NCBI RefSeq assembly: GCF_963676685.1
Contig: NC_092349.1
Span: 79,980,001-80,044,000 of the forward strand
Direction of reading: 5' to 3'
DNA: 64,000 bases
Source of the DNA: Mytilus edulis
Lineage: Eukaryota
Each line of letters starts with the position of its first letter. Within the stretch, counting starts at the first letter, position 1. The translations under genes were made by a program, and so were the position numbers. This document shows positions 9,041-48,000 of the stretch, in pieces. The notes under the pieces were generated by a model. That model was given only the letters and a program-made list of their open reading frames with translations, made no database searches and was not told the origin of the DNA.

Positions 9041-12000
9041 TTACAATGACTGTTCTTTTTGGGACTGCAAAGGAATTATCACATCTGGTTCTTTGTTCAG
9101 TGGTATATCGTTAGGAGTTCTACCAGCATATCCAAGGTGGAATTCGGTGATGGATTTGATGTAGCCTTTTTGTTTGATTATCATGGATATCATTATTACA
9201 GAAACCAAAACTAAAATCATGATGACAGCAATAACCAGTGTGATAAGCCAATGATCGTTTAGGAAGTTGCTGTCTCTGGGTGGAACTGAAAATAAAAAGG
9301 ACAATATCACCAATGTTTTTCATTATTCTACATTTCTAACCATGCGTTTAATTATATATCTAAAGTAATATTTCTGTGGAGGGTTTAAATATGTGCAAGT
9401 TATTGATTTTGTTGAATTGTCACTACACTTAATTATGTACTGCTAAAATACTGTACAACCAATATGGTTACAATTGCGCAATTATTTGTTTACATTTCAC
9501 CGGGAAGTTTTTGAACCCAAGATGGTAGTAAGGAAAAAAATCTATGAGGCTTCTGATTGGATGGTATGCCTTCCATTTATTGATTTTATGAAAGATAAAC
9601 CATTTTTGTGCAAAAATAGTAACAATTTGGAATGATTGATTTAGTATTCTCTGTGGAAATATTTTTTTTGTGGTAATAGGTTGACTGAAAATTTTGCTAT
9701 GTCATTTAGTGCGGATTTTGGAAGCGTCCATAACAACAGCTATTTAAGGCAATTTCCGCCGCATAAGCATGTTGTTTTTTTTTACTGAAATAAATTCTTA
9801 GTATGTCTCCTTTCAGATTCTGGCTTTGGTTTCTCTGCAATTTATGTACTTTTTTTTTTATTAGGATTCAAAGAGACAGGGTACCCTATGTAAAATGCAT
9901 TGTAAATAATTGCGCAATTGTAACCTATAGAATTTCTCTACTTTCACTTTCGATATTGGATTTTCAGAAAATCTGACTCTGAATCAAACATTCAATTGAT
10001 TTTGATTGAATTTTAATCAATATGGATGACTTTTGGAGAGAACTACAACACAAATTCAACAAAAAAACCCAGGGAAGTGTCAATGGAAAGGGGTGTATTG
10101 AGTGGTCGGGCACAAAAAAGGGAAAATCTGGTTATGGCATACAGGTTGTGAAATGGCCACAGGGGGAGAAAAAAAGGGAGGCTGCACATAGAGTGGCATA
10201 TATGATTAGGCATAAATTGACCAGATATGATATGCCAAGGGTGGATGAAAACAATAATACAATAGAGTGTAGCCATATTTGTCACAATGCATCATGTGTA
10301 AATGTAAACCACCTTGTTTTAGAACCTCATGCTATTAACTTGGACCGACTGCACTGTAAAAACCAGGGACTATGTTCAAAGAGTCACAAACCATATTGTT
10401 TAATTTAAAAGTACTAAATTTATTTATTTTCGAATAGAAATCTTCTTCTGCTTCTTGTTCTTAACATACGGGTGGTCTTCATGTTTTGATTTTGATGATT
10501 TTATGCCGCGGTCAGCTTTCATTAGCATATTCTTCTCATATTGGATTATTTCGCTGAGTTTTTCATATAATTTGTATAACTTGCACCTTTTTTCACCTCG
10601 AAATACTTTATAATTTACACTTTGTTTGTGTTTTTTCTGCAAAATGTCAGTTTTTTGAATATTTTTCAGAGCCTTGTATGCACTACTGCCTACTGGAATA
10701 TCACAGTGTAGAGCACTACAGAGTTCTAATATAGACTCCCCTGGACCATTATTAACGCTGTGAGCTGCTGCATGTGCACGACCAGACATGTTTTTCTTGA
10801 AAGTAACATTTGAAGGTAATGATCTTCTTAAACACCTATTAAATCCCTCAACAAAATTGGTGTTCATGTTTAACCGTGTCTTTTCAAGCACTTTGGAACC
10901 AAGTCGCTTATTTATTTGTTTCCGAAGCGAGTCTAAATTCTCATTGCAGCTACTTATATTAAAAGAATTTGGTAAGAAAGGACGGCCTTTTAACCACGAT
11001 CCCTGAAATCCTTTACAGGCAAAGGAGTTTTTTCTGCACCTGGCATGATCTCCCATGTAGCAGTAAGCTATGGCATCCACAGTGTGAGAAATTTTATTTT
11101 TTACTTTGCAAAAGTCTCCAGCATAAAATTTATAGGCCAGTAATAGTTCTCTGTTACATCTCTCAGTCAGATCAACAGAGAAATTATTCAAAAGTTTTTG
11201 TCTTTTTAGTTTTGTTGTAGCTGGCATCACTTTTAAAAGAGTTTTATCTGACTTTGCTCCTTTACGTACATGGTCGGAAAGATGTCTAGTGTCTAAAAAG
11301 TTTTCTGGCTCAACAGTATTTATACCCTCATTGTGAAGGTCCATGGCAGCTTTATAGGCAGAACTGTCTGCATCAGTAACTAAATGCTCAATTTCAAGTT
11401 GGTCTTCCTTTAAATCAAGGAGGCATTCCCTGGCCCAGGTATACTCATCTCCTATACTTTTTACCATGGGTATATTTGCACTGCAATCATCTGTGCAATC
11501 TTCATGAAGTCGGCCTGAGTCATTGTCTACGTCAAGACTAGAATGTTTGGAACAGAGCTTGTTTTTGATATTTAATGCTAATATATTGTGTTTTGATGTT
11601 TCATTTTCAGCTGCCGTATAAATTGTTTGTGTTGCCGGTTGAAATGGAGTGCGGCCTACACCAGAATACAGTGGATTATTGTACATTCCATCCATTTGAA
11701 CACTTATAGCATGTGGATTTTCCTTGCCTCTTAACTTATTTATTTCTACAATATCATTTCTTCTTCTTTTCATATCCTGTTTATTAATTTGTTCAATTTG
11801 TTTCATGACTGTATTTGCTCTTCTTTGTAGGCTAGATGTTGTTGGAGCCAAGATGTTACCACTTAAGAAGATTTTTTGTATACCAGAATAAGCAATGGGT
11901 GATTGACTCAGGCCGACATGAATTGCAGTGTCAAGTTTTGATGCTTTTCTCCCAGGTTTCCCACTTTCCAATTCTTCATACAGGGTGTACCGCTTTGATT

Positions 12001-15000
12001 TGTAATCACACTTTGTGCATATTAGCTGTTGTCGCGTTCCAAAGCCTCTTTTCTCTTCATTTCCTAAATCGCATAGCAGAATACCTTCACACTGTGGATT
12101 TCTCAATTGATGTTCTTTAAATGCTGCATTCCACATTTCCTCCATCTTGTATATACATATTGCTCTGTTTGAATTGTAATCCGGTCTAAAAAATATCAAA
12201 AAAAATAAAAATTAGACTTAGCAAAGTACATATGCCTATTTACTAATTTTGAAAATAGAGTTACCTGCCCCTTAGTTGACAGATATTTTTCTCTGTGATT
12301 TTAGATGGTACATAGACTTTTAAATCTTGCAATATGTATGAAGATGCTTCTTTTTATTAATATATTTGTTGTTTAATTCATAAAAATAACAGTTTATATG
12401 ATTATACTGTTCTTTTTTAATTAAGAAAGGTGCATAGTGGCTCAAAATGGGCAATTTTTTGTACTTTTTACTCTATTATTTCCAAATTATTGTCTTTTTT
12501 GGTAAAAATATTTCACTTAAACTGTTTATGAGTAAATATTATTCAATTGTTAGCTTACCTTTTGTCCTTTTTAGCATTTTTCCTAATTGGTTTGGTAAGA
12601 AGCACCTCATCACTCATTGGACGGAGTAATCTTGCAGCACGGCACACCCTTTTGGATTTCTCCTGTGGATTAGCATACGGATCATTCACTACTAAATTGT
12701 GTTTTTCTTTGGTAAGTCTAATGTACTTAGATGTGTAAGAGTCACTTTTATTTTGTTTCACAGTCTTTCTTTTCTTGTTATAAGGAACATTTCCACCTTT
12801 GAATTTGTGTGTATTTCCCTTTTGGAATACCATATTTAGTAAAACAACAGAATTTTCACTTATATTCTACACTGTCTTTTTTTTTTATATGCTGATTTTG
12901 AATAATGTTCTTATAATTTCTTTTTGCAATATAAGTTGAAATCAAATGCTCACTAATTTATAGAAGAAATTGAAAAGAAACAGATGACCCCTTAAATTTT
13001 TACAGAATTTCTAAATAGACAACAAGATAATGTTTTGATATTTTTATAGTTTCTGTGAGGACAGCCAGATTTAATGCATATCATCTTTATTTCTCTTATC
13101 ATTGGTAATAAAATGATAGAGGTTAATGATTCAAAGTGCCTCTTCAGTACACTTTTTTTTGGACAAAAGTTTTGAAAATATATGAAAAAAGACTGTTTTT
13201 CACTATTTTCAATAAATCTTGGGTATATTCCACCCTGAATAAAATTTGAAATCAACTTATACATACGCAAAGAAACATTGCTTATATGTACATGAAAAAA
13301 CAACATTTGTATTTTTTTGTAGAATTTTAATGCTTGAATTTTTCATTTAAACTTCTGTTTCAGTTGGTATTGCTGACTAAATCTTCTACTGGCCGCAAAC
13401 ATGGGATGAAGTATAGAAATGTCCATTTCTCAAAGAAGACTTCACAGATCACTTCCTAATTTGGTGTGTGTGATAGACATAGATAGTTGTATATGCAGGC
13501 AAAAATAAAGTCTCATTTGAAAACTTTTTATTCTTTCTATAGAATTTCTCTACTTTCACTTTCGATATTGGATTTTCAGAAAATCTGACTCTGAATCAAA
13601 CATTCAATTGATTTTGATTGAATTTTAATCAATATGGATGACTTTTGGAGAGAACTACAACACAAATTCAACAAAAAAACCCAGGGAAGTGTCAATGGAA
13701 AGGGGTGTATTGAGTGGTCGGGCACAAAAAAGGGAAAATCTGGTTATGGCATACAGGTTGTGAAATGGCCACAGGGGGAGAAAAAAAGGGAGGCTGCACA
13801 TAGAGTGGCATATATGATTAGGCATAAATTGACCAGATATGATATGCCAAGGGTGGATGAAAACAATAATACAATAGAGTGTAGCCATATTTGTCACAAT
13901 GCATCATGTGTAAATGTAAACCACCTTGTTTTAGAACCTCATGCTATTAACTTGGACCGACTGCACTGTAAAAACCAGGGACTATGTTCAAAGAGTCACA
14001 AACCATATTGTTTAATTTAAAAGTACTAAATTTATTTATTTTCGAATAGAAATCTTCTTCTGCTTCTTGTTCTTAACATACGGGTGGTCTTCATGTTTTG
14101 ATTTTGATGATTTTATGCCGCGGTCAGCTTTCATTAGCATATTCTTCTCATATTGGATTATTTCGCTGAGTTTTTCATATAATTTGTATAACTTGCACCT
14201 TTTTTCACCTCGAAATACTTTATAATTTACACTTTGTTTGTGTTTTTTCTGCAAAATGTCAGTTTTTTGAATATTTTTCAGAGCCTTGTATGCACTACTG
14301 CCTACTGGAATATCACAGTGTAGAGCACTACAGAGTTCTAATATAGACTCCCCTGGACCATTATTAACGCTGTGAGCTGCTGCATGTGCACGACCAGACA
14401 TGTTTTTCTTGAAAGTAACATTTGAAGGTAATGATCTTCTTAAACACCTATTAAATCCCTCAACAAAATTGGTGTTCATGTTTAACCGTGTCTTTTCAAG
14501 CACTTTGGAACCAAGTCGCTTATTTATTTGTTTCCGAAGCGAGTCTAAATTCTCATTGCAGCTACTTATATTAAAAGAATTTGGTAAGAAAGGACGGCCT
14601 TTTAACCACGATCCCTGAAATCCTTTACAGGCAAAGGAGTTTTTTCTGCACCTGGCATGATCTCCCATGTAGCAGTAAGCTATGGCATCCACAGTGTGAG
14701 AAATTTTATTTTTTACTTTGCAAAAGTCTCCAGCATAAAATTTATAGGCCAGTAATAGTTCTCTGTTACATCTCTCAGTCAGATCAACAGAGAAATTATT
14801 CAAAAGTTTTTGTCTTTTTAGTTTTGTTGTAGCTGGCATCACTTTTAAAAGAGTTTTATCTGACTTTGCTCCTTTACGTACATGGTCGGAAAGATGTCTA
14901 GTGTCTAAAAAGTTTTCTGGCTCAACAGTATTTATACCCTCATTGTGAAGGTCCATGGCAGCTTTATAGGCAGAACTGTCTGCATCAGTAACTAAATGCT

Positions 15001-18000
15001 CAATTTCAAGTTGGTCTTCCTTTAAATCAAGGAGGCATTCCCTGGCCCAGGTATACTCATCTCCTATACTTTTTACCATGGGTATATTTGCACTGCAATC
15101 ATCTGTGCAATCTTCATGAAGTCGGCCTGAGTCATTGTCTACGTCAAGACTAGAATGTTTGGAACAGAGCTTGTTTTTGATATTTAATGCTAATATATTG
15201 TGTTTTGATGTTTCATTTTCAGCTGCCGTATAAATTGTTTGTGTTGCCGGTTGAAATGGAGTGCGGCCTACACCAGAATACAGTGGATTATTGTACATTC
15301 CATCCATTTGAACACTTATAGCATGTGGATTTTCCTTGCCTCTTAACTTATTTATTTCTACAATATCATTTCTTCTTCTTTTCATATCCTGTTTATTAAT
15401 TTGTTCAATTTGTTTCATGACTGTATTTGCTCTTCTTTGTAGGCTAGATGTTGTTGGAGCCAAGATGTTACCACTTAAGAAGATTTTTTGTATACCAGAA
15501 TAAGCAATGGGTGATTGACTCAGGCCGACATGAATTGCAGTGTCAAGTTTTGATGCTTTTCTCCCAGGTTTCCCACTTTCCAATTCTTCATACAGGGTGT
15601 ACCGCTTTGATTTGTAATCACACTTTGTGCATATTAGCTGTTGTCGCGTTCCAAAGCCTCTTTTCTCTTCATTTCCTAAATCGCATAGCAGAATACCTTC
15701 ACACTGTGGATTTCTCAATTGATGTTCTTTAAATGCTGCATTCCACATTTCCTCCATCTTGTATATACATATTGCTCTGTTTGAATTGTAATCCGGTCTA
15801 AAAAATATCAAAAAAAATAAAAATTAGACTTAGCAAAGTACATATGCCTATTTACTAATTTTGAAAATAGAGTTACCTGCCCCTTAGTTGACAGATATTT
15901 TTCTCTGTGATTTTAGATGGTACATAGACTTTTAAATCTTGCAATATGTATGAAGATGCTTCTTTTTATTAATATATTTGTTGTTTAATTCATAAAAATA
16001 ACAGTTTATATGATTATACTGTTCTTTTTTAATTAAGAAAGGTGCATAGTGGCTCAAAATGGGCAATTTTTTGTACTTTTTACTCTATTATTTCCAAATT
16101 ATTGTCTTTTTTGGTAAAAATATTTCACTTAAACTGTTTATGAGTAAATATTATTCAATTGTTAGCTTACCTTTTGTCCTTTTTAGCATTTTTCCTAATT
16201 GGTTTGGTAAGAAGCACCTCATCACTCATTGGACGGAGTAATCTTGCAGCACGGCACACCCTTTTGGATTTCTCCTGTGGATTAGCATACGGATCATTCA
16301 CTACTAAATTGTGTTTTTCTTTGGTAAGTCTAATGTACTTAGATGTGTAAGAGTCACTTTTATTTTGTTTCACAGTCTTTCTTTTCTTGTTATAAGGAAC
16401 ATTTCCACCTTTGAATTTGTGTGTATTTCCCTTTTGGAATACCATATTTAGTAAAACAACAGAATTTTCACTTATATTCTACACTGTCTTTTTTTTTTAT
16501 ATGCTGATTTTGAATAATGTTCTTATAATTTCTTTTTGCAATATAAGTTGAAATCAAATGCTCACTAATTTATAGAAGAAATTGAAAAGAAACAGATGAC
16601 CCCTTAAATTTTTACAGAATTTCTAAATAGACAACAAGATAATGTTTTGATATTTTTATAGTTTCTGTGAGGACAGCCAGATTTAATGCATATCATCTTT
16701 ATTTCTCTTATCATTGGTAATAAAATGATAGAGGTTAATGATTCAAAGTGCCTCTTCAGTACACTTTTTTTTGGACAAAAGTTTTGAAAATATATGAAAA
16801 AAGACTGTTTTTCACTATTTTCAATAAATCTTGGGTATATTCCACCCTGAATAAAATTTGAAATCAACTTATACATACGCAAAGAAACATTGCTTATATG
16901 TACATGAAAAAACAACATTTGTATTTTTTTGTAGAATTTTAATGCTTGAATTTTTCATTTAAACTTCTGTTTCAGTTGGTATTGCTGACTAAATCTTCTA
17001 CTGGCCGCAAACATGGGATGAAGTATAGAAATGTCCATTTCTCAAAGAAGACTTCACAGATCACTTCCTAATTTGGTGTGTGTGATAGACATAGATAGTT
17101 GTATATGCAGGCAAAAATAAAGTCTCATTTGAAAACTTTTTATTCTTTCTATAGAATTTCTCTACTTTCACTTTCGATATTGGATTTTCAGAAAATCTGA
17201 CTCTGAATCAAACATTCAATTGATTTTGATTGAATTTTAATCAATATGGATGACTTTTGGAGAGAACTACAACACAAATTCAACAAAAAAACCCAGGGAA
17301 GTGTCAATGGAAAGGGGTGTATTGAGTGGTCGGGCACAAAAAAGGGAAAATCTGGTTATGGCATACAGGTTGTGAAATGGCCACAGGGGGAGAAAAAAAG
17401 GGAGGCTGCACATAGAGTGGCATATATGATTAGGCATAAATTGACCAGATATGATATGCCAAGGGTGGATGAAAACAATAATACAATAGAGTGTAGCCAT
17501 ATTTGTCACAATGCATCATGTGTAAATGTAAACCACCTTGTTTTAGAACCTCATGCTATTAACTTGGACCGACTGCACTGTAAAAACCAGGGACTATGTT
17601 CAAAGAGTCACAAACCATATTGTTTAATTTAAAAGTACTAAATTTATTTATTTTCGAATAGAAATCTTCTTCTGCTTCTTGTTCTTAACATACGGGTGGT
17701 CTTCATGTTTTGATTTTGATGATTTTATGCCGCGGTCAGCTTTCATTAGCATATTCTTCTCATATTGGATTATTTCGCTGAGTTTTTCATATAATTTGTA
17801 TAACTTGCACCTTTTTTCACCTCGAAATACTTTATAATTTACACTTTGTTTGTGTTTTTTCTGCAAAATGTCAGTTTTTTGAATATTTTTCAGAGCCTTG
17901 TATGCACTACTGCCTACTGGAATATCACAGTGTAGAGCACTACAGAGTTCTAATATAGACTCCCCTGGACCATTATTAACGCTGTGAGCTGCTGCATGTG

Positions 18001-21000
18001 CACGACCAGACATGTTTTTCTTGAAAGTAACATTTGAAGGTAATGATCTTCTTAAACACCTATTAAATCCCTCAACAAAATTGGTGTTCATGTTTAACCG
18101 TGTCTTTTCAAGCACTTTGGAACCAAGTCGCTTATTTATTTGTTTCCGAAGCGAGTCTAAATTCTCATTGCAGCTACTTATATTAAAAGAATTTGGTAAG
18201 AAAGGACGGCCTTTTAACCACGATCCCTGAAATCCTTTACAGGCAAAGGAGTTTTTTCTGCACCTGGCATGATCTCCCATGTAGCAGTAAGCTATGGCAT
18301 CCACAGTGTGAGAAATTTTATTTTTTACTTTGCAAAAGTCTCCAGCATAAAATTTATAGGCCAGTAATAGTTCTCTGTTACATCTCTCAGTCAGATCAAC
18401 AGAGAAATTATTCAAAAGTTTTTGTCTTTTTAGTTTTGTTGTAGCTGGCATCACTTTTAAAAGAGTTTTATCTGACTTTGCTCCTTTACGTACATGGTCG
18501 GAAAGATGTCTAGTGTCTAAAAAGTTTTCTGGCTCAACAGTATTTATACCCTCATTGTGAAGGTCCATGGCAGCTTTATAGGCAGAACTGTCTGCATCAG
18601 TAACTAAATGCTCAATTTCAAGTTGGTCTTCCTTTAAATCAAGGAGGCATTCCCTGGCCCAGGTATACTCATCTCCTATACTTTTTACCATGGGTATATT
18701 TGCACTGCAATCATCTGTGCAATCTTCATGAAGTCGGCCTGAGTCATTGTCTACGTCAAGACTAGAATGTTTGGAACAGAGCTTGTTTTTGATATTTAAT
18801 GCTAATATATTGTGTTTTGATGTTTCATTTTCAGCTGCCGTATAAATTGTTTGTGTTGCCGGTTGAAATGGAGTGCGGCCTACACCAGAATACAGTGGAT
18901 TATTGTACATTCCATCCATTTGAACACTTATAGCATGTGGATTTTCCTTGCCTCTTAACTTATTTATTTCTACAATATCATTTCTTCTTCTTTTCATATC
19001 CTGTTTATTAATTTGTTCAATTTGTTTCATGACTGTATTTGCTCTTCTTTGTAGGCTAGATGTTGTTGGAGCCAAGATGTTACCACTTAAGAAGATTTTT
19101 TGTATACCAGAATAAGCAATGGGTGATTGACTCAGGCCGACATGAATTGCAGTGTCAAGTTTTGATGCTTTTCTCCCAGGTTTCCCACTTTCCAATTCTT
19201 CATACAGGGTGTACCGCTTTGATTTGTAATCACACTTTGTGCATATTAGCTGTTGTCGCGTTCCAAAGCCTCTTTTCTCTTCATTTCCTAAATCGCATAG
19301 CAGAATACCTTCACACTGTGGATTTCTCAATTGATGTTCTTTAAATGCTGCATTCCACATTTCCTCCATCTTGTATATACATATTGCTCTGTTTGAATTG
19401 TAATCCGGTCTAAAAAATATCAAAAAAAATAAAAATTAGACTTAGCAAAGTACATATGCCTATTTACTAATTTTGAAAATAGAGTTACCTGCCCCTTAGT
19501 TGACAGATATTTTTCTCTGTGATTTTAGATGGTACATAGACTTTTAAATCTTGCAATATGTATGAAGATGCTTCTTTTTATTAATATATTTGTTGTTTAA
19601 TTCATAAAAATAACAGTTTATATGATTATACTGTTCTTTTTTAATTAAGAAAGGTGCATAGTGGCTCAAAATGGGCAATTTTTTGTACTTTTTACTCTAT
19701 TATTTCCAAATTATTGTCTTTTTTGGTAAAAATATTTCACTTAAACTGTTTATGAGTAAATATTATTCAATTGTTAGCTTACCTTTTGTCCTTTTTAGCA
19801 TTTTTCCTAATTGGTTTGGTAAGAAGCACCTCATCACTCATTGGACGGAGTAATCTTGCAGCACGGCACACCCTTTTGGATTTCTCCTGTGGATTAGCAT
19901 ACGGATCATTCACTACTAAATTGTGTTTTTCTTTGGTAAGTCTAATGTACTTAGATGTGTAAGAGTCACTTTTATTTTGTTTCACAGTCTTTCTTTTCTT
20001 GTTATAAGGAACATTTCCACCTTTGAATTTGTGTGTATTTCCCTTTTGGAATACCATATTTAGTAAAACAACAGAATTTTCACTTATATTCTACACTGTC
20101 TTTTTTTTTTATATGCTGATTTTGAATAATGTTCTTATAATTTCTTTTTGCAATATAAGTTGAAATCAAATGCTCACTAATTTATAGAAGAAATTGAAAA
20201 GAAACAGATGACCCCTTAAATTTTTACAGAATTTCTAAATAGACAACAAGATAATGTTTTGATATTTTTATAGTTTCTGTGAGGACAGCCAGATTTAATG
20301 CATATCATCTTTATTTCTCTTATCATTGGTAATAAAATGATAGAGGTTAATGATTCAAAGTGCCTCTTCAGTACACTTTTTTTTGGACAAAAGTTTTGAA
20401 AATATATGAAAAAAGACTGTTTTTCACTATTTTCAATAAATCTTGGGTATATTCCACCCTGAATAAAATTTGAAATCAACTTATACATACGCAAAGAAAC
20501 ATTGCTTATATGTACATGAAAAAACAACATTTGTATTTTTTTGTAGAATTTTAATGCTTGAATTTTTCATTTAAACTTCTGTTTCAGTTGGTATTGCTGA
20601 CTAAATCTTCTACTGGCCGCAAACATGGGATGAAGTATAGAAATGTCCATTTCTCAAAGAAGACTTCACAGATCACTTCCTAATTTGGTGTGTGTGATAG
20701 ACATAGATAGTTGTATATGCAGGCAAAAATAAAGTCTCATTTGAAAACTTTTTATTCTTTCTATAGAATTTCTCTACTTTCACTTTCGATATTGGATTTT
20801 CAGAAAATCTGACTCTGAATCAAACATTCAATTGATTTTGATTGAATTTTAATCAATATGGATGACTTTTGGAGAGAACTACAACACAAATTCAACAAAA
20901 AAACCCAGGGAAGTGTCAATGGAAAGGGGTGTATTGAGTGGTCGGGCACAAAAAAGGGAAAATCTGGTTATGGCATACAGGTTGTGAAATGGCCACAGGG

Positions 21001-36000: not shown

Positions 36001-39000
36001 CATGACTGTATTTGCTCTTCTTTGTAGGCTAGATGTTGTTGGAGCCAAGATGTTACCACTTAAGAAGATTTTTTGTATACCAGAATAAGCAATGGGTGAT
36101 TGACTCAGGCCGACATGAATTGCAGTGTCAAGTTTTGATGCTTTTCTCCCAGGTTTCCCACTTTCCAATTCTTCATACAGGGTGTACCGCTTTGATTTGT
36201 AATCACACTTTGTGCATATTAGCTGTTGTCGCGTTCCAAAGCCTCTTTTCTCTTCATTTCCTAAATCGCATAGCAGAATACCTTCACACTGTGGATTTCT
36301 CAATTGATGTTCTTTAAATGCTGCATTCCACATTTCCTCCATCTTGTATATACATATTGCTCTGTTTGAATTGTAATCCGGTCTAAAAAATATCAAAAAA
36401 AATAAAAATTAGACTTAGCAAAGTACATATGCCTATTTACTAATTTTGAAAATAGAGTTACCTGCCCCTTAGTTGACAGATATTTTTCTCTGTGATTTTA
36501 GATGGTACATAGACTTTTAAATCTTGCAATATGTATGAAGATGCTTCTTTTTATTAATATATTTGTTGTTTAATTCATAAAAATAACAGTTTATATGATT
36601 ATACTGTTCTTTTTTAATTAAGAAAGGTGCATAGTGGCTCAAAATGGGCAATTTTTTGTACTTTTTACTCTATTATTTCCAAATTATTGTCTTTTTTGGT
36701 AAAAATATTTCACTTAAACTGTTTATGAGTAAATATTATTCAATTGTTAGCTTACCTTTTGTCCTTTTTAGCATTTTTCCTAATTGGTTTGGTAAGAAGC
36801 ACCTCATCACTCATTGGACGGAGTAATCTTGCAGCACGGCACACCCTTTTGGATTTCTCCTGTGGATTAGCATACGGATCATTCACTACTAAATTGTGTT
36901 TTTCTTTGGTAAGTCTAATGTACTTAGATGTGTAAGAGTCACTTTTATTTTGTTTCACAGTCTTTCTTTTCTTGTTATAAGGAACATTTCCACCTTTGAA
37001 TTTGTGTGTATTTCCCTTTTGGAATACCATATTTAGTAAAACAACAGAATTTTCACTTATATTCTACACTGTCTTTTTTTTTTATATGCTGATTTTGAAT
37101 AATGTTCTTATAATTTCTTTTTGCAATATAAGTTGAAATCAAATGCTCACTAATTTATAGAAGAAATTGAAAAGAAACAGATGACCCCTTAAATTTTTAC
37201 AGAATTTCTAAATAGACAACAAGATAATGTTTTGATATTTTTATAGTTTCTGTGAGGACAGCCAGATTTAATGCATATCATCTTTATTTCTCTTATCATT
37301 GGTAATAAAATGATAGAGGTTAATGATTCAAAGTGCCTCTTCAGTACACTTTTTTTTGGACAAAAGTTTTGAAAATATATGAAAAAAGACTGTTTTTCAC
37401 TATTTTCAATAAATCTTGGGTATATTCCACCCTGAATAAAATTTGAAATCAACTTATACATACGCAAAGAAACATTGCTTATATGTACATGAAAAAACAA
37501 CATTTGTATTTTTTTGTAGAATTTTAATGCTTGAATTTTTCATTTAAACTTCTGTTTCAGTTGGTATTGCTGACTAAATCTTCTACTGGCCGCAAACATG
37601 GGATGAAGTATAGAAATGTCCATTTCTCAAAGAAGACTTCACAGATCACTTCCTAATTTGGTGTGTGTGATAGACATAGATAGTTGTATATGCAGGCAAA
37701 AATAAAGTCTCATTTGAAAACTTTTTATTCTTTCTATAGAATTTCTCTACTTTCACTTTCGATATTGGATTTTCAGAAAATCTGACTCTGAATCAAACAT
37801 TCAATTGATTTTGATTGAATTTTAATCAATATGGATGACTTTTGGAGAGAACTACAACACAAATTCAACAAAAAAACCCAGGGAAGTGTCAATGGAAAGG
37901 GGTGTATTGAGTGGTCGGGCACAAAAAAGGGAAAATCTGGTTATGGCATACAGGTTGTGAAATGGCCACAGGGGGAGAAAAAAAGGGAGGCTGCACATAG
38001 AGTGGCATATATGATTAGGCATAAATTGACCAGATATGATATGCCAAGGGTGGATGAAAACAATAATACAATAGAGTGTAGCCATATTTGTCACAATGCA
38101 TCATGTGTAAATGTAAACCACCTTGTTTTAGAACCTCATGCTATTAACTTGGACCGACTGCACTGTAAAAACCAGGGACTATGTTCAAAGAGTCACAAAC
38201 CATATTGTTTAATTTAAAAGTACTAAATTTATTTATTTTCGAATAGAAATCTTCTTCTGCTTCTTGTTCTTAACATACGGGTGGTCTTCATGTTTTGATT
38301 TTGATGATTTTATGCCGCGGTCAGCTTTCATTAGCATATTCTTCTCATATTGGATTATTTCGCTGAGTTTTTCATATAATTTGTATAACTTGCACCTTTT
38401 TTCACCTCGAAATACTTTATAATTTACACTTTGTTTGTGTTTTTTCTGCAAAATGTCAGTTTTTTGAATATTTTTCAGAGCCTTGTATGCACTACTGCCT
38501 ACTGGAATATCACAGTGTAGAGCACTACAGAGTTCTAATATAGACTCCCCTGGACCATTATTAACGCTGTGAGCTGCTGCATGTGCACGACCAGACATGT
38601 TTTTCTTGAAAGTAACATTTGAAGGTAATGATCTTCTTAAACACCTATTAAATCCCTCAACAAAATTGGTGTTCATGTTTAACCGTGTCTTTTCAAGCAC
38701 TTTGGAACCAAGTCGCTTATTTATTTGTTTCCGAAGCGAGTCTAAATTCTCATTGCAGCTACTTATATTAAAAGAATTTGGTAAGAAAGGACGGCCTTTT
38801 AACCACGATCCCTGAAATCCTTTACAGGCAAAGGAGTTTTTTCTGCACCTGGCATGATCTCCCATGTAGCAGTAAGCTATGGCATCCACAGTGTGAGAAA
38901 TTTTATTTTTTACTTTGCAAAAGTCTCCAGCATAAAATTTATAGGCCAGTAATAGTTCTCTGTTACATCTCTCAGTCAGATCAACAGAGAAATTATTCAA

Positions 39001-42000
39001 AAGTTTTTGTCTTTTTAGTTTTGTTGTAGCTGGCATCACTTTTAAAAGAGTTTTATCTGACTTTGCTCCTTTACGTACATGGTCGGAAAGATGTCTAGTG
39101 TCTAAAAAGTTTTCTGGCTCAACAGTATTTATACCCTCATTGTGAAGGTCCATGGCAGCTTTATAGGCAGAACTGTCTGCATCAGTAACTAAATGCTCAA
39201 TTTCAAGTTGGTCTTCCTTTAAATCAAGGAGGCATTCCCTGGCCCAGGTATACTCATCTCCTATACTTTTTACCATGGGTATATTTGCACTGCAATCATC
39301 TGTGCAATCTTCATGAAGTCGGCCTGAGTCATTGTCTACGTCAAGACTAGAATGTTTGGAACAGAGCTTGTTTTTGATATTTAATGCTAATATATTGTGT
39401 TTTGATGTTTCATTTTCAGCTGCCGTATAAATTGTTTGTGTTGCCGGTTGAAATGGAGTGCGGCCTACACCAGAATACAGTGGATTATTGTACATTCCAT
39501 CCATTTGAACACTTATAGCATGTGGATTTTCCTTGCCTCTTAACTTATTTATTTCTACAATATCATTTCTTCTTCTTTTCATATCCTGTTTATTAATTTG
39601 TTCAATTTGTTTCATGACTGTATTTGCTCTTCTTTGTAGGCTAGATGTTGTTGGAGCCAAGATGTTACCACTTAAGAAGATTTTTTGTATACCAGAATAA
39701 GCAATGGGTGATTGACTCAGGCCGACATGAATTGCAGTGTCAAGTTTTGATGCTTTTCTCCCAGGTTTCCCACTTTCCAATTCTTCATACAGGGTGTACC
39801 GCTTTGATTTGTAATCACACTTTGTGCATATTAGCTGTTGTCGCGTTCCAAAGCCTCTTTTCTCTTCATTTCCTAAATCGCATAGCAGAATACCTTCACA
39901 CTGTGGATTTCTCAATTGATGTTCTTTAAATGCTGCATTCCACATTTCCTCCATCTTGTATATACATATTGCTCTGTTTGAATTGTAATCCGGTCTAAAA
40001 AATATCAAAAAAAATAAAAATTAGACTTAGCAAAGTACATATGCCTATTTACTAATTTTGAAAATAGAGTTACCTGCCCCTTAGTTGACAGATATTTTTC
40101 TCTGTGATTTTAGATGGTACATAGACTTTTAAATCTTGCAATATGTATGAAGATGCTTCTTTTTATTAATATATTTGTTGTTTAATTCATAAAAATAACA
40201 GTTTATATGATTATACTGTTCTTTTTTAATTAAGAAAGGTGCATAGTGGCTCAAAATGGGCAATTTTTTGTACTTTTTACTCTATTATTTCCAAATTATT
40301 GTCTTTTTTGGTAAAAATATTTCACTTAAACTGTTTATGAGTAAATATTATTCAATTGTTAGCTTACCTTTTGTCCTTTTTAGCATTTTTCCTAATTGGT
40401 TTGGTAAGAAGCACCTCATCACTCATTGGACGGAGTAATCTTGCAGCACGGCACACCCTTTTGGATTTCTCCTGTGGATTAGCATACGGATCATTCACTA
40501 CTAAATTGTGTTTTTCTTTGGTAAGTCTAATGTACTTAGATGTGTAAGAGTCACTTTTATTTTGTTTCACAGTCTTTCTTTTCTTGTTATAAGGAACATT
40601 TCCACCTTTGAATTTGTGTGTATTTCCCTTTTGGAATACCATATTTAGTAAAACAACAGAATTTTCACTTATATTCTACACTGTCTTTTTTTTTTATATG
40701 CTGATTTTGAATAATGTTCTTATAATTTCTTTTTGCAATATAAGTTGAAATCAAATGCTCACTAATTTATAGAAGAAATTGAAAAGAAACAGATGACCCC
40801 TTAAATTTTTACAGAATTTCTAAATAGACAACAAGATAATGTTTTGATATTTTTATAGTTTCTGTGAGGACAGCCAGATTTAATGCATATCATCTTTATT
40901 TCTCTTATCATTGGTAATAAAATGATAGAGGTTAATGATTCAAAGTGCCTCTTCAGTACACTTTTTTTTGGACAAAAGTTTTGAAAATATATGAAAAAAG
41001 ACTGTTTTTCACTATTTTCAATAAATCTTGGGTATATTCCACCCTGAATAAAATTTGAAATCAACTTATACATACGCAAAGAAACATTGCTTATATGTAC
41101 ATGAAAAAACAACATTTGTATTTTTTTGTAGAATTTTAATGCTTGAATTTTTCATTTAAACTTCTGTTTCAGTTGGTATTGCTGACTAAATCTTCTACTG
41201 GCCGCAAACATGGGATGAAGTATAGAAATGTCCATTTCTCAAAGAAGACTTCACAGATCACTTCCTAATTTGGTGTGTGTGATAGACATAGATAGTTGTA
41301 TATGCAGGCAAAAATAAAGTCTCATTTGAAAACTTTTTATTCTTTCTATAGAATTTCTCTACTTTCACTTTCGATATTGGATTTTCAGAAAATCTGACTC
41401 TGAATCAAACATTCAATTGATTTTGATTGAATTTTAATCAATATGGATGACTTTTGGAGAGAACTACAACACAAATTCAACAAAAAAACCCAGGGAAGTG
41501 TCAATGGAAAGGGGTGTATTGAGTGGTCGGGCACAAAAAAGGGAAAATCTGGTTATGGCATACAGGTTGTGAAATGGCCACAGGGGGAGAAAAAAAGGGA
41601 GGCTGCACATAGAGTGGCATATATGATTAGGCATAAATTGACCAGATATGATATGCCAAGGGTGGATGAAAACAATAATACAATAGAGTGTAGCCATATT
41701 TGTCACAATGCATCATGTGTAAATGTAAACCACCTTGTTTTAGAACCTCATGCTATTAACTTGGACCGACTGCACTGTAAAAACCAGGGACTATGTTCAA
41801 AGAGTCACAAACCATATTGTTTAATTTAAAAGTACTAAATTTATTTATTTTCGAATAGAAATCTTCTTCTGCTTCTTGTTCTTAACATACGGGTGGTCTT
41901 CATGTTTTGATTTTGATGATTTTATGCCGCGGTCAGCTTTCATTAGCATATTCTTCTCATATTGGATTATTTCGCTGAGTTTTTCATATAATTTGTATAA

Positions 42001-45000
42001 CTTGCACCTTTTTTCACCTCGAAATACTTTATAATTTACACTTTGTTTGTGTTTTTTCTGCAAAATGTCAGTTTTTTGAATATTTTTCAGAGCCTTGTAT
42101 GCACTACTGCCTACTGGAATATCACAGTGTAGAGCACTACAGAGTTCTAATATAGACTCCCCTGGACCATTATTAACGCTGTGAGCTGCTGCATGTGCAC
42201 GACCAGACATGTTTTTCTTGAAAGTAACATTTGAAGGTAATGATCTTCTTAAACACCTATTAAATCCCTCAACAAAATTGGTGTTCATGTTTAACCGTGT
42301 CTTTTCAAGCACTTTGGAACCAAGTCGCTTATTTATTTGTTTCCGAAGCGAGTCTAAATTCTCATTGCAGCTACTTATATTAAAAGAATTTGGTAAGAAA
42401 GGACGGCCTTTTAACCACGATCCCTGAAATCCTTTACAGGCAAAGGAGTTTTTTCTGCACCTGGCATGATCTCCCATGTAGCAGTAAGCTATGGCATCCA
42501 CAGTGTGAGAAATTTTATTTTTTACTTTGCAAAAGTCTCCAGCATAAAATTTATAGGCCAGTAATAGTTCTCTGTTACATCTCTCAGTCAGATCAACAGA
42601 GAAATTATTCAAAAGTTTTTGTCTTTTTAGTTTTGTTGTAGCTGGCATCACTTTTAAAAGAGTTTTATCTGACTTTGCTCCTTTACGTACATGGTCGGAA
42701 AGATGTCTAGTGTCTAAAAAGTTTTCTGGCTCAACAGTATTTATACCCTCATTGTGAAGGTCCATGGCAGCTTTATAGGCAGAACTGTCTGCATCAGTAA
42801 CTAAATGCTCAATTTCAAGTTGGTCTTCCTTTAAATCAAGGAGGCATTCCCTGGCCCAGGTATACTCATCTCCTATACTTTTTACCATGGGTATATTTGC
42901 ACTGCAATCATCTGTGCAATCTTCATGAAGTCGGCCTGAGTCATTGTCTACGTCAAGACTAGAATGTTTGGAACAGAGCTTGTTTTTGATATTTAATGCT
43001 AATATATTGTGTTTTGATGTTTCATTTTCAGCTGCCGTATAAATTGTTTGTGTTGCCGGTTGAAATGGAGTGCGGCCTACACCAGAATACAGTGGATTAT
43101 TGTACATTCCATCCATTTGAACACTTATAGCATGTGGATTTTCCTTGCCTCTTAACTTATTTATTTCTACAATATCATTTCTTCTTCTTTTCATATCCTG
43201 TTTATTAATTTGTTCAATTTGTTTCATGACTGTATTTGCTCTTCTTTGTAGGCTAGATGTTGTTGGAGCCAAGATGTTACCACTTAAGAAGATTTTTTGT
43301 ATACCAGAATAAGCAATGGGTGATTGACTCAGGCCGACATGAATTGCAGTGTCAAGTTTTGATGCTTTTCTCCCAGGTTTCCCACTTTCCAATTCTTCAT
43401 ACAGGGTGTACCGCTTTGATTTGTAATCACACTTTGTGCATATTAGCTGTTGTCGCGTTCCAAAGCCTCTTTTCTCTTCATTTCCTAAATCGCATAGCAG
43501 AATACCTTCACACTGTGGATTTCTCAATTGATGTTCTTTAAATGCTGCATTCCACATTTCCTCCATCTTGTATATACATATTGCTCTGTTTGAATTGTAA
43601 TCCGGTCTAAAAAATATCAAAAAAAATAAAAATTAGACTTAGCAAAGTACATATGCCTATTTACTAATTTTGAAAATAGAGTTACCTGCCCCTTAGTTGA
43701 CAGATATTTTTCTCTGTGATTTTAGATGGTACATAGACTTTTAAATCTTGCAATATGTATGAAGATGCTTCTTTTTATTAATATATTTGTTGTTTAATTC
43801 ATAAAAATAACAGTTTATATGATTATACTGTTCTTTTTTAATTAAGAAAGGTGCATAGTGGCTCAAAATGGGCAATTTTTTGTACTTTTTACTCTATTAT
43901 TTCCAAATTATTGTCTTTTTTGGTAAAAATATTTCACTTAAACTGTTTATGAGTAAATATTATTCAATTGTTAGCTTACCTTTTGTCCTTTTTAGCATTT
44001 TTCCTAATTGGTTTGGTAAGAAGCACCTCATCACTCATTGGACGGAGTAATCTTGCAGCACGGCAAACCCTTTTGGATTTCTCCTGTGGATTAGCATACG
44101 GATCATTCACTACTAAATTGTGTTTTTCTTTGGTAAGTCTAATGTACTTAGATGTGTAAGAGTCACTTTTATTTTGTTTCACAGTCTTTCTTTTCTTGTT
44201 ATAAGGAACATTTCCACCTTTGAATTTGTGTGTATTTCCCTTTTGGAATACCATATTTAGTAAAACAACAGAATTTTCACTTATATTCTACACTGTCTTT
44301 TTTTTTTATATGCTGATTTTGAATAATGTTCTTATAATTTCTTTTTGCAATATAAGTTGAAATCAAATGCTCACTAATTTATAGAAGAAATTGAAAAGAA
44401 ACAGATGACCCCTTAAATTTTTACAGAATTTCTAAATAGACAACAAGATAATGTTTTGATATTTTTATAGTTTCTGTGAGGACAGCCAGATTTAATGCAT
44501 ATCATCTTTATTTCTCTTATCATTGGTAATAAAATGATAGAGGTTAATGATTCAAAGTGCCTCTTCAGTACACTTTTTTTTGGACAAAAGTTTTGAAAAT
44601 ATATGAAAAAAGACTGTTTTTCACTATTTTCAATAAATCTTGGGTATATTCCACCCTGAATAAAATTTGAAATCAACTTATACATACGCAAAGAAACATT
44701 GCTTATATGTACATGAAAAAACAACATTTGTATTTTTTTGTAGAATTTTAATGCTTGAATTTTTCATTTAAACTTCTGTTTCAGTTGGTATTGCTGACTA
44801 AATCTTCTACTGGCCGCAAACATGGGATGAAGTATAGAAATGTCCATTTCTCAAAGAAGACTTCACAGATCACTTCCTAATTTGGTGTGTGTGATAGACA
44901 TAGATAGTTGTATATGCAGGCAAAAATAAAGTCTCATTTGAAAACTTTTTATTCTTTCTATAGGTTACAATTGCGCAATTATTTGTTTACATTTCACCGG

Positions 45001-48000
45001 GAAGTTTTTGAACCCAAGATGGTAGTAAGGAAAAAAATCTATGAGGCTTCTGATTGGATGGTATGCCTTCCATTTATTGATTTTATGAAAGATAAACCAT
45101 TTTTGTGCAAAAATAGTAACAATTTGGAATGATTGATTTAGTATTCTCTGTGGAAATATTTTTTTTGTGGTAATAGGTTGACTGAAAATTTTGCTATGTC
45201 ATTTAGTGCGGATTTTGGAAGCGTCCATAACAACAGCTATTTAAGGCAATTTCCGCCGCATAAGCATGTTGTTTTTTTTTACTGAAATAAATTCTTAGTA
45301 TGTCTCCTTTCAGATTCTGGCTTTGGTTTCTCTGCAATTTATGTACTTTTTTTTTTATTAGGATTCAAAGAGACAGGGTACCCTATGTAAAATGCATTGT
45401 AAATAATTGCGCAATTGTAACCATATATGTAAAACACGTAACGATGTAACAATACAAATTTTATAGAATTCATTATGCATAATATATTTATGACGTTTTA
45501 CCAAATTAATTAATTTATTGAGCTTTGTATTGAAATTTTGTATATCAAATGATTGAAGTATATATCTCATAAATGAATACCAACATTTAATGTTTCCTTG
45601 CATCTAAATTTCACAACAAACATAGGCTTCATAAAGTAACATATCCTCAACTCTGTTAAGCCTGTGTATTTATTTTATCATAGATATGATTACAGAAAAA
45701 TAAAGAGGAAATCTTGCAACCTCTGTATCCTTTATGATATCAGAGTACCTTTGAATTTTCACATTTACGTCGTGACAATGATTTGAAAAATAATTGCTTT
45801 CTACCGCTTCGAAGATATGTTTAACAAGATTTGTGACTGCTTTTCGTAAAGTTTGATGTTCATCTTTGCTGCGATTTAAACTTGTGCTGTTTATATTCGA
45901 TGGCAACTGATCAGCTATATTTTGTCCTGTATAGACGAACCCGTGTCAAAAGCCTCGGTCAAACCGTAACAGATAGCTAGAATGGATGCCTAACGGATGA
46001 CTTTTTTTCAATCCGTTCATGTCCGTTAGACGTCCGTTATTATCCGTTAGACGTCCGTCCATATCTGTTGCATGTCCGTTTAGCGTACGTTTTATCCATC
46101 GACGTCCATTCTGTCCAATGGAAATTTTTTGAGCATGTTCAAAACTTTGAACTGACTCCCAATGGATAAAATGTTAGTTGGACGTCCGGTCGTCGTCCGT
46201 TTTTTACGGTACTCGTCCGTTTCGTTTCCGTATTGTATCCGTTACGTGTCCGTTATGCATCCGTTGGAGGTCTGGAAAATAATTTTACCAACGGACTTCT
46301 ACCGGACGTTTAACGGATAAAACGGATGTTGAACGAATGATAAACGGACTTCTACCGGACGTATAACGGATAAAACGGATGATGAACGGATCTGAGACGG
46401 ATAAATGCCAATTGAAAATTTCTCGTCAGAAATGCCAATTATTGGTATGTCAGACATTTGTGTCAGATTTCTTAAGGTTCATTAATTCTTATTATTCATA
46501 ATCGATCTTAGAGTAATGGCACTTCTTCACAATCAAGCAGCTCTTTGGTGGCGTTTTGAAGAACAAACCAAAACCAGTTACACAGAAACATTTTGAATAT
46601 TTATGCGATTTACATGTATTATTATTGTCGTCTTTAATTTTTTATCTTGTTCATCCGTTTTATCCGGTACGCTTCCGTTAGGTGTTCGTTTTATGCGGTA
46701 CCCGTCCATTAGATGTATGTTCGACTTCCGTTCTGTCCGGTACGTTTCACATCCGGTGTGTGTCCGTTATGCATTCGTTACACGTCCGTTTTATTCGGTC
46801 AGTACATCAACGGACTCCCAACGGATAACAATTTTGTCAACGGACAACTTTTATTTTCATCCGTTAGTCGTCCGTTCGTGCTATCCGGTAAGGTGTGACC
46901 GAGGCTTTAGATTGCGAAATAAATATAAATGCCCATAGTTAATTGGTTGTTATTACTAAATTAATGTTATTTCAACTGATCGGCCGGAGCTTACGTTTCA
47001 ATTTGCATAAGGACAGTCTATTCAAAGATGTGTGTGATAAGGATGATTGCCGTTATTATTGTTACTGATTTCTAATCACCCATCAGTGTTATCAAACAGA
47101 TATACAGAAATAAAAGTGTACAATAAGGGATGAAATAGTTGTTGGTTTTTTTTTTTGCATTTACATGTGCTTAAGCAGAGCTTTTTTTACATGGGCTGTC
47201 GTTTTATTCTGTTTGTAACTTTTCTGATTGAAAATTTTGATTTAATTTAAACGTGTTTTATAGAAAATATATATATATATTCCATTTGCAGCGTATTTCT
47301 GTGCACCCCCTTAAATCATTCAGAATATAATGAGGAGAAAAAAAAGTATTTAAACGCGGTTTAAAAAAAATACATACGCATATTTTGAAGCTGATGTCCT
47401 CATGGTTTTACTTTCAATTTCACCAATTCCCATATGTGACAAATTTAACATGTTTTAAAACTATGCCTTACAAGAATATCAACAACTGTGTCTCATTATT
47501 TATTTTCCGAAAACACAAGTAATACGTGTTTACATATTTTAACCGGATCAATGAGCATAACTGGACACTTCATTTATGATTTTATCCTAAAACTCTTGTC
47601 TATAGATGGATTGGTCTATATTGAGCGAGCTTGTTAAAGTCCGCCCAGTCAAGTGAAATAAATCCAGTAATACAGTTAGCATCATATATTACTCTTTACA
47701 TTAAATTTCGGTTATGCCGAAACAGACACCAATATAAGTCAATAAACCTTTCCAATCACTTTTGTGTCATTTATTTTGGTAAGTTTTTTCTTTTATTGTC
47801 TTTTCCTTTGCTCACAAGTTTCTAACACCCCATATCAATTCGTTAAAACGGCTTGAGATAAGATGAAATGACATATAATAATTTAAGTTTCTTTCTGGCT
47901 ATATAAAGATCTGACATATCAATGTTAGAAAAGATTCTGCAGATATCATATTCCTTGGCTTGAAATGCAGATGGTACCTGGGACTATTATACTGACAGAA

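What the first reader, a model, noticed from the sequence alone, without database searches (positions are those of the whole stretch)
9466..45422. Composite eukaryotic transposon pairing a DDD/E transposase with a homing endonuclease, amplified as LTDR-(INT)>=10-LTDR
Seen: two identical 460-bp TIR-bearing direct repeats enclose at least 10 tandem 3612-bp units, each with an intact transposase and an intact His-Me finger nuclease; the whole block has a single ATAT TSD. Established: this gene pair plus ~450-bp LTDRs defines KolobokP, which is rich in bivalves and whose usual multimers are (LTDR-INT)n-LTDR, so the family itself is not new. Unusual here: none of the nine internal junctions has an LTDR, so the coding core has expanded as a gene-bearing macrosatellite inside one pair of ends. 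Inference: one LTDR was lost from a dimer and the empty INT-INT unit then amplified by unequal crossover or break-induced repair, or an excised INT circle was rolling-circle amplified.
Basis: partly seen in the sequence, partly recalled or inferred. Interest (0 to 1): 0.92.

Follow-up and report, generated by a model that had tools for sequence, protein, structure and literature searches.

The report
KolobokP transposon core amplified in tandem
This is a mussel KolobokP DNA transposon whose 3.6-kb two-gene core is repeated at least ten times between one pair of terminal repeats; this layout was already published in 2022 for up to four copies, so it is a large example of a known thing.

Summary
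Two identical 460-bp LTDRs (22-bp perfect TIRs, GG...CC ends, ATAT on both outer sides) enclose a 3612-bp repeat. Nine of nine readable INT-INT junctions lack an LTDR and share a single TATA.

The assembly gap is not in phase. It hides at least 1190 bp plus any number of whole units, so n is at least 10 and otherwise unknown. Nine units carry exact, intact copies of both genes. The unit cut by the gap is partial and carries a +T frameshift.

The proteins match Pfam PF20700 (5e-45) and PF05551 (6e-14). The transposase is nearly identical to KolobokP-3_MyGa in Kojima & Bao 2022.

The claimed novelty fails. That paper already tabulates LTDR-(INT)n-LTDR (n up to 4), describes the single TATA at INT-INT junctions, and attributes it to LTDR excision.

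Three things are new:
- the size and purity of the array (9/9 LTDR-less junctions, against about 6/40 in other KolobokP arrays of this genome);
- the complete ends of a family the paper left unfinished;
- this array holds the only full-length copies of the family in the assembly.

One LTDR loss followed by unequal crossover is the likeliest origin. No read-level test was possible. The scan holds no earlier KolobokP array finding on other DNA.

The parts
9462..9465 (.). Left target-site duplication ATAT
   Evidence: Read directly. It matches 45423-45426. Chance of an identical 4-mer is 0.006.
9466..9925 (-). Left LTDR in window orientation: 460 bp, 22-bp perfect TIR GGTTACAATTGCGCAATTATTT, GG...CC termini. 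Each TIR holds the 12-bp palindrome AATTGCGCAATT.
   Evidence: Identical 460/460 to the right LTDR.
9926..24393 (-). Four complete 3612-bp INT units (9926-13537, 13538-17149, 17150-20761, 20762-24375) plus the first 18 bp of a fifth. The first three are identical. The fourth has two extra T, the one at about 23989 in a T homopolymer run; the sequence around the other was not resolved.
10022..10408 (+). His-Cys box / His-Me finger nuclease gene, 128 aa, shown for unit 1. Nine exact copies start at 10022, 13634, 17246, 20858, 26995, 30607, 34219, 37831 and 41443.
   Evidence: PF05551 at 6.4e-14. Aligns to I-PpoI residues 87-127, which puts S84-H85, C87, C92, H97, E101, N106 and C112 on I-PpoI S97-H98, C100, C105, H110, E114, N119 and C125. 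Exact copies counted.
10424..12185 (-). Transposase exon 2, including the stop codon (unit 1). Nine exact copies.
   Evidence: The ORF is. PF20700 at 5.4e-45. Near-identical to KolobokP-3_MyGa_1p in Data S3 of PMC9587614. Copies counted.
12186..12558 (-). Predicted 373-nt intron of the transposase gene (AAG|GTAAGC ... TTTTTTAG|A)
   Evidence: In-frame GT-AG search. This is a model only, with no RNA evidence.
12559..12833 (-). Predicted transposase exon 1: a basic N-terminal part resembling the N-termini of other KolobokP transposases
   Evidence: 92-aa ORF. By-eye similarity to the KolobokP-4_MyEd, -6_CorFlu and -8_CorFlu N-termini. Splice model.
13535..13544 (.). First INT-INT junction, TTC-TATA-GAA. 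One TATA stands where the LTDR-bearing ends have TATA-LTDR-TATA. The same junction recurs every 3612 bp.
24394..24493 (.). Assembly gap (100 N), not in register. At least 1190 bp + k x 3612 bp are missing.
24494..44962 (-). Partial INT (from INT position 1209, with +T at 25476) followed by five complete INT units (26899-30510, 30511-34122, 34123-37734, 37735-41346, 41347-44958) and the closing TATA. The only substitution is a synonymous C>A at 44066 in the last unit.
44963..45422 (-). Right LTDR, identical to the left one
45423..45426 (.). Right target-site duplication ATAT

Best explanation
This is a single insertion of a Mytilus KolobokP DNA transposon. The family is the one published as the incomplete consensus KolobokP-3_MyGa. 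Its architecture is LTDR-(INT)n-LTDR with n of at least 10.

Shown:
- The element has the KolobokP parts: 460-bp LTDRs with their own TIRs, a 4-bp TSD, and a DDD/E transposase gene convergent with a His-Cys box nuclease gene.
- Every readable INT-INT junction keeps one TATA, which looks like the empty site left when an LTDR plus 4 bp is removed.

Inferred history:
1. A monomer became a dimer by unequal exchange between its LTDRs.
2. The transposase excised the middle LTDR, giving LTDR-INT-INT-LTDR.
3. Unequal sister-chromatid or allelic crossover (or break-induced repair) between the 3.6-kb INT copies then expanded the LTDR-less unit and keeps it homogeneous.

The element's own nuclease may supply the breaks that start these exchanges. 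That step is speculation.

Confidence that this is a KolobokP LTDR-(INT)n-LTDR multimer is about 0.95. The 0.6 given here is for the single-loss-then-amplification route.
For: Structure.

Proteins: PF20700 at 5.4e-45 and PF05551 at 6.4e-14. I-PpoI is the best match among solved structures, with the catalytic and zinc residues aligned. The transposase is near-identical to KolobokP-3_MyGa_1p, and KolobokP-1_PeVi is the next relative. The nuclease fits the KolobokP His-Me signature in Data S4.

Published precedent: LTDR-(INT)2-4-LTDR, the single TATA and LTDR excision.

Single loss rather than many losses:
- 9/9 junctions here are LTDR-less, against about 6/40 in seven other KolobokP arrays of the same genome (spacings). 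Fisher p = 2e-6.
- With independent excision at any single rate, the probability of 9 internal LTDRs lost and both terminal ones kept is at most 0.005.

Recent expansion or homogenisation: units are 100% identical. The only substitution lies in the outermost unit.

The two contig halves belong together: the assembly holds exactly one LTDR->INT junction, and the only INT->LTDR junction attached to a full INT. Both ends show the same ATAT.
Against: Copy number, unit identity and the absence of internal LTDRs in the unread part therefore rest on the assembly alone.

The gap shows that the assembler could not cross the array.

The junction count across other arrays mixes families and treats junctions as independent events, which they are not.

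Nothing in the sequence separates unequal crossover from other homology-driven routes, such as a concatemer or circle integrated by recombination. All of these keep the register.

The role of the nuclease is untested. A 2026 review says the KolobokP nuclease model still awaits experiment.
Confidence: 0.6

Rival explanations
1. The array was a canonical (LTDR-INT)n-LTDR multimer, and each internal LTDR was later excised independently by the transposase. This is the route the 2022 paper gives for INT-INT substructures.
For: LTDR excision with a 3-4-bp microdeletion is documented. Because INT has TATA at both tips, every independent excision would give the same junction. Mixed arrays with some LTDR-less junctions exist in this genome.
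Against: All 9 readable internal LTDRs are gone while both terminal ones are intact. The probability is at most 0.005 at any uniform excision rate, and about 4e-8 at the roughly 15% seen in other arrays. Only one solo LTDR of this family (98%) exists elsewhere, although nine excised LTDRs could have reinserted.
Confidence: 0.1
2. An extrachromosomal INT circle (or INT concatemer made by rolling-circle replication) recombined back into a resident copy and delivered many LTDR-less units in one step.
For: The paper discusses circular intermediates and a copy-out-like footprint. Perfect unit identity fits one-step amplification.
Against: No circle or circle junction can be observed here. The published circle model contains an LTDR (LTDR+INT), not INT alone. 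The outcome cannot be told apart from unequal crossover by sequence.
Confidence: 0.1
3. Assembly artefact: the true locus has one or a few INT copies or hidden LTDRs. The ten identical units come from mis-assembly or over-polishing of a repeat, and the two halves were joined wrongly by scaffolding.
For: There is an out-of-phase 100-N gap inside the array. Units are 100% identical. Stray T indels occur in the two units bordering the gap. Other KolobokP arrays in this assembly also abut gaps.
Against: Two independently assembled contigs each run from unique flank through an LTDR into 4 and 5.7 units with identical LTDR-less junctions. The family has exactly one left end, and one right end attached to a full INT, in the assembly. 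The same architecture is published for other bivalve assemblies. A contig break inside the array is what a real array longer than the reads would produce.
Confidence: 0.07

Closest known systems
KolobokP-3_MyGa (Mytilus galloprovincialis; Kojima & Bao 2022, Mob DNA 13:24, Table S1 and Data S3)
   Same: The transposase is nearly identical, residue for residue, over about 500 aa from MEEMWNAAFKEH... to ...NFVEGFNRCLRR (compared by eye because the supplement text cannot be passed to an aligner).
   Different: The published entry is incomplete: >4379 bp, with LTDR, TSD, TIR and copy numbers all '?' or '-'. Its protein goes out of frame after RCLRR. The copies here stay in frame and continue like KolobokP-1_PeVi. 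They also supply the missing ends: 460-bp LTDR, 22-bp TIR, 4-bp TSD, 3616-bp INT. The LTDR terminus is not in the paper's supplement.
LTDR-(INT)n-LTDR insertions of KolobokP-1_MeMe, KolobokP-7_MeMe and KolobokP-4_MyCo (same paper, Table 2)
   Same: The architecture is the same. INT begins and ends with TATA, a single TATA stands at each INT-INT junction, and TSDs flank the whole multimer.
   Different: Published n is 2 to 4, often mixed with LTDR-bearing junctions. Here n is at least 10, with 9 of 9 readable junctions LTDR-less and units identical.
KolobokP-1_PeVi (Perna viridis)
   Same: Next-closest transposase in the paper's alignment. Similar size (4530 bp, 461-bp LTDR, 24-bp TIR). Its LTDR start, ggatacaagagcgcaattatttgaatgcatttt, resembles the reverse complement of this LTDR's end.
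   Different: A clearly different family, with many substitutions in both protein and LTDR.
I-PpoI and other His-Cys box homing endonucleases of group I introns
   Same: The nuclease gene hits PF05551 and aligns to the I-PpoI active-site region, with the catalytic His and Asn and the zinc ligands conserved.
   Different: It is carried by a DNA transposon rather than an intron. Its target site is unknown. At 128 aa it is shorter than I-PpoI (163 aa). The sequence E-value against I-PpoI is only 0.02.
Gene-bearing macrosatellites and tandem arrays that evolve by unequal crossover
   Same: Head-to-tail kilobase units, near-perfect homogeneity, and the only substitution in an edge unit.
   Different: The unit is the coding core of a transposon, and the array is still bounded by the transposon's terminal repeats and a TSD.

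Membership tests
KolobokP (Kolobok superfamily) | [quoted passage not shown] | tested here: met
   460-bp LTDRs at 9466-9925 and 44963-45422, identical 460/460.
KolobokP (Kolobok superfamily) | Each LTDR has its own short TIRs, with 5'-RR ... YY-3' termini | tested here: met
   22-bp perfect TIR, GG...CC termini. Slightly longer than most of the 1-25-bp TIRs listed in the part of Table S1 read.
KolobokP (Kolobok superfamily) | 3-5-bp target-site duplication around the whole element or multimer | tested here: met
   ATAT on both outer sides. Chance 0.006.
KolobokP (Kolobok superfamily) | DDD/E transposase belonging to the KolobokP clade | tested here: met
   PF20700 at 5.4e-45 (the Pfam label is 'Mutator-like', and Pfam returned no family named Kolobok). 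Near-identity to KolobokP-3_MyGa_1p and conserved blocks shared with all KolobokP transposases in Data S3. No phylogeny was recomputed.
KolobokP (Kolobok superfamily) | Small His-Me finger (His-Cys box) nuclease gene downstream of the transposase gene on the opposite strand | tested here: met
   128-aa ORF at 10022-10408 (+), convergent with the transposase (-). The two stop codons are 15 bp apart. PF05551 at 6.4e-14. I-PpoI alignment. KolobokP signature.
KolobokP LTDR-(INT)n-LTDR multimer subtype | Abutted INTs with a 3-4-bp microdeletion at the junction (one TATA instead of two) | tested here: met
   Nine junctions ...TTC TATA GAA..., against TATA-LTDR-TATA at the two ends.
KolobokP LTDR-(INT)n-LTDR multimer subtype | The structure exists in the organism's DNA, not only in the assembly | not testable with these tools
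His-Cys box homing endonucleases (I-PpoI group) | Catalytic His and Asn plus eight Cys/His zinc ligands | tested here: met
   S84-H85, N106, H97, C87, C92 and C112 align to I-PpoI S97-H98, N119, H110, C100, C105 and C125. C25, C118, H122 and C126 were assigned by pattern only.
His-Cys box homing endonucleases (I-PpoI group) | Sequence-specific double-strand cleavage of a defined homing site | not testable with these tools
   There are no biochemical data. Two candidate palindromes were only noted: AATTGCGCAATT in each TIR and TTCTATAGAA at the INT-INT junction.

The most novel reading that the evidence does not exclude
The LTDR-less INT array is a self-sustaining, gene-bearing macrosatellite. 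It is much longer than the roughly 36 kb assembled and varies in length between individuals. It expands without any internal LTDR because the element's own His-Cys box nuclease cuts inside INT or at the TTCTATAGAA junction and triggers unequal exchange. If so, the published 'nuclease cuts the LTDR' model of KolobokP multimerisation would be incomplete. This single locus would also be the only source of transposase for the family and for the abundant 1.3-kb non-autonomous relatives that share its LTDR termini.
Probability: 0.15. Interest if true: 0.55.

Novelty: new member of a known kind. Interest (0 to 1): 0.3.

Why it matters
It adds little in principle. The architecture, the junction footprint and the likely mechanism were all published in 2022.

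It does give three useful facts:
1. It supplies the full structure of a family that the describing paper could not complete. A possible reason (inference) is that the full-length copies sit in one hard-to-assemble array.
2. KolobokP cores can reach ten or more identical copies with no internal LTDR. Multimer growth therefore does not need LTDR-LTDR exchange once an INT-INT dimer exists.
3. It offers a clean natural substrate for testing where the element's nuclease cuts. A 2026 review still lists that question as open.

It is also a practical warning. KolobokP multimers break this assembly at least at three loci, so copy numbers read from the assembly are minima.

Tried and rejected
- Tandem Repeats Finder found nothing because its longest period is 500. 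Autocorrelation and BLAST were used instead.
Neither was retried or worked around.
- The LTDR terminus and the INT start were searched in the paper's supplement with no hit. Guessed header spellings also failed. The family was identified through peptide words instead.
- An empty-site or alternative-haplotype copy of the flanks was sought in the assembly and none exists. The 800 bp to the left and the first roughly 520 bp to the right are unique.
- The 744-bp length difference between units of the C8 array was suspected to be an LTDR. It has no TIRs and is an internal indel. The LTDR-less junction of that array lies elsewhere.
Given the TATA centre it needs only three further matching pairs. 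It is kept as a lead, not a finding.
- The joined (spliced) transposase was not searched or folded. Exons were handled separately by reference, and the join was only checked for an open frame in a script.
- No tRNA genes and only five ORFs of 100 aa or more, the longest 157 aa, lie in the flanks. No host gene context was found.
Full report
**1. Observation**

The block between 9466 and 45422 is a long-period tandem repeat. Self-identity is 0.87 at a lag of 3612 bp and about 0.3 at neighbouring lags. BLAST of one unit against the window gives 100% identical copies throughout. TRF missed it only because its maximum period is 500.

The two bounding repeats, 9466-9925 and 44963-45422, are identical at 460/460. 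They end in a 22-bp perfect TIR (GGTTACAATTGCGCAATTATTT) with GG...CC termini. Outside them both flanks read ATAT (chance 0.006). Inside them both read TATA.

The internal unit (INT) begins and ends with TATA, but consecutive units share a single TATA (...TTC TATA GAA...). The period is therefore 3612 bp, while an isolated INT would be 3616 bp.

**2. The gap, tested first**

The 100 N at 24394-24493 are not in register. The left contig ends 18 bp into a unit and the right contig resumes at unit position 1209. At least 1190 bp are missing, plus any multiple of 3612.

There are 4 complete units (14.5 kb) left of the gap. To the right there are a partial unit plus 5 complete units (20.5 kb). Ten is the minimum copy number.

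Inference: each contig reaches 14-21 kb into the array from unique flank and then stops. That is the behaviour expected when the array is longer than the reads and the units are too alike to anchor. The real number may be larger.

The two halves do belong together. In the entire 1.37-Gb assembly there is one LTDR->INT junction (the left end) and nine INT-INT junctions (all here). The INT->LTDR junction occurs twice: at the right end here and in a truncated fragment on another chromosome.

**3. Differences between units**

- There are two extra T in the last unit before the gap. One lies in a run of T.
- There is one extra T at 25476 in the partial unit after the gap. It falls in transposase exon 2 and would shift the frame.
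- There is one synonymous C>A at 44066 in the outermost right unit.
- Nine units carry exact copies of both genes. The statement 'each unit intact' therefore holds for nine units, not ten.

**4. Genes**

The 128-aa ORF on the + strand (10022-10408) matches PF05551 zf-His_Me_endon at 6.4e-14. Its best match among solved structures is I-PpoI (E = 0.02). In that alignment S84-H85, C87, C92, H97, E101, N106 and C112 fall on I-PpoI S97-H98, C100, C105, H110, E114, N119 and C125.

The 591-aa ORF on the - strand (10424-12199) matches PF20700 at 5.4e-45. A 92-aa ORF further upstream on the same strand (12555-12833) resembles the basic N-termini of other KolobokP transposases. It can be joined to the main ORF by a canonical 373-nt intron: AAG|GTAAGC at 12558 and TTTTTTAG|A at 12186. 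This gives a 678-aa model. The model has no RNA support. I did not search or fold the joined protein and handled the exons separately.

**5. What it is**

Kojima & Bao 2022 (PMC9587614) define KolobokP by exactly these parts. Peptide words from the transposase found a nearly identical sequence in their Data S3, namely KolobokP-3_MyGa_1p from Mytilus galloprovincialis. KolobokP-1_PeVi is the next relative. Its LTDR start also resembles this LTDR read on the opposite strand.

Table S1 lists KolobokP-3_MyGa as incomplete: >4379 bp, with LTDR, TSD, TIR and copy numbers unknown. Its protein runs out of frame near the C-terminus, whereas the copies here stay in frame.

The genome has 14 chromosome-sized contigs and 1.37 Gb, which fits Mytilus. 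I did not check that.

**6. Is the LTDR-less multimer new? No**

The paper's Table 2 has a column 'LTDR-(INT)n-LTDR'. [quoted passage not shown] It states that this INT starts and ends with TATA and that only one TATA remains at INT-INT junctions. It attributes the structure to excision of an LTDR or a monomer. It also says that unequal crossover can change unit number once a multimer exists.

**7. Context in this genome**

- Of this family, the assembly holds only the array, one truncated INT-LTDR fragment (99%), one solo LTDR (98%) and one older INT fragment (93-94%). All full-length copies are therefore in this one locus. The family has grown by local amplification rather than by transposition.
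- Other KolobokP families (42-51% transposase identity) form multimers of 4 to about 10 units. These lie on C2, C3, C4, C5 and C8 and on unplaced contigs made entirely of such arrays.
- From unit spacings and direct inspection, roughly 34 of their junctions keep the LTDR and 6 lack it.
- On C5 the LTDR-less junction is again LTDR plus 4 bp removed.
- A non-autonomous relative shows three abutted INTs inside an LTDR-bearing array.
- At least two of these arrays also abut assembly gaps.

**8. How the array arose**

Nine of nine LTDR-less junctions here, against about 6 of 40 elsewhere, gives Fisher p = 2e-6. If each LTDR were lost independently at any one rate, losing nine internal LTDRs while keeping both terminal ones has probability at most 0.005. 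These figures are descriptive. Junctions within an array are not independent, and the families differ.

The 3.6 kb of homology between INT copies is eight times the LTDR length, so unequal exchange between INTs should dominate once a dimer exists. The perfect identity of the units, with the single substitution sitting in an edge unit, fits ongoing unequal crossover or gene conversion.

A concatemer or circle re-integrated by recombination would give the same sequence and cannot be excluded. The element's nuclease may supply the initiating breaks. A 2026 review notes that this model is still untested.

**9. What could not be done**

The reality of the copy number and of the LTDR-less junctions therefore rests on three things:
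- two independently assembled contigs that agree;
- the bookkeeping of junctions across the assembly;
- published precedent.

**10. Verdict**

The identification as KolobokP is right. The proposed origin is the best available model. The novelty claim is not right, because the architecture and its footprint are published.

What is new is a tenfold or larger, purely LTDR-less array that holds every full-length copy of the family, and the complete ends of KolobokP-3_MyGa. Interest is 0.3.

Noticed in passing
G000:C451:1-10000 (L021) and G000:C13:13990000-13997000 (L022); also C398, C8, C10, C11 and others listed: There is an abundant non-autonomous KolobokP relative in 1306-bp multimers. Its LTDR termini are 83-87% identical to this LTDR (first 101 bp and last 46 bp; TIR GGTTACAAGAGCGCAATTATT), and its INT again starts with TATA. 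One array contains three abutted INTs at 843-bp spacing with no LTDR. It may be mobilised by this family's transposase (inference).
   Followed up: partly
window 9472-9483, 9908-9919, 44969-44980, 45405-45416: Each TIR contains the perfect 12-bp palindrome AATTGCGCAATT. About 0.01 such palindromes are expected by chance within a TIR. It is a candidate binding or cleavage site for a dimeric protein such as the His-Cys box nuclease. It is only partly conserved in KolobokP-1_PeVi and in the non-autonomous relative (AAGAGCGCAATT).
   Followed up: partly
window 25476: An extra T (TTT to TTTT) lies in transposase exon 2 of the partial unit, about 980 bp after the gap. It would frameshift that copy. 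It may be a real mutation or a contig-end error.
   Followed up: partly
G000:C4:93108000-93147999 (L017-L020): An array of another KolobokP family has one junction carrying two tandem LTDRs (spacing 4529 = INT 3621 + 2 x 454). It also has an assembly gap inside the array.
   Followed up: partly
G000:C5:27600000-27640000 (L009, L004, L007, L005): This KolobokP array has the junction pattern L, L, none, none. Across a 100-N gap it abuts a roughly 71-bp satellite array of about 5 kb. The join may be a scaffolding join rather than true adjacency.
   Followed up: no
G000:C8:81394000-81443999 (L010-L014): This array of about ten units from a third KolobokP family has units in two sizes (4835 and 4089 bp). 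They differ by a 744-bp internal segment without TIRs. The two size classes are clustered, as expected if blocks of units were duplicated together.
   Followed up: partly
window 45946-46222: A roughly 275-bp interspersed repeat lies in the right flank. It has more than 1500 first-look candidates genome-wide at about 89% identity. It looks like a SINE or MITE and was not classified.
   Followed up: no
window 12992-13306 (-) and the equivalent position in every unit: A 104-aa ORF lies upstream of the transposase gene with no Pfam match (best hit E = 0.28). It is probably non-coding promoter or 5' region.
   Followed up: partly
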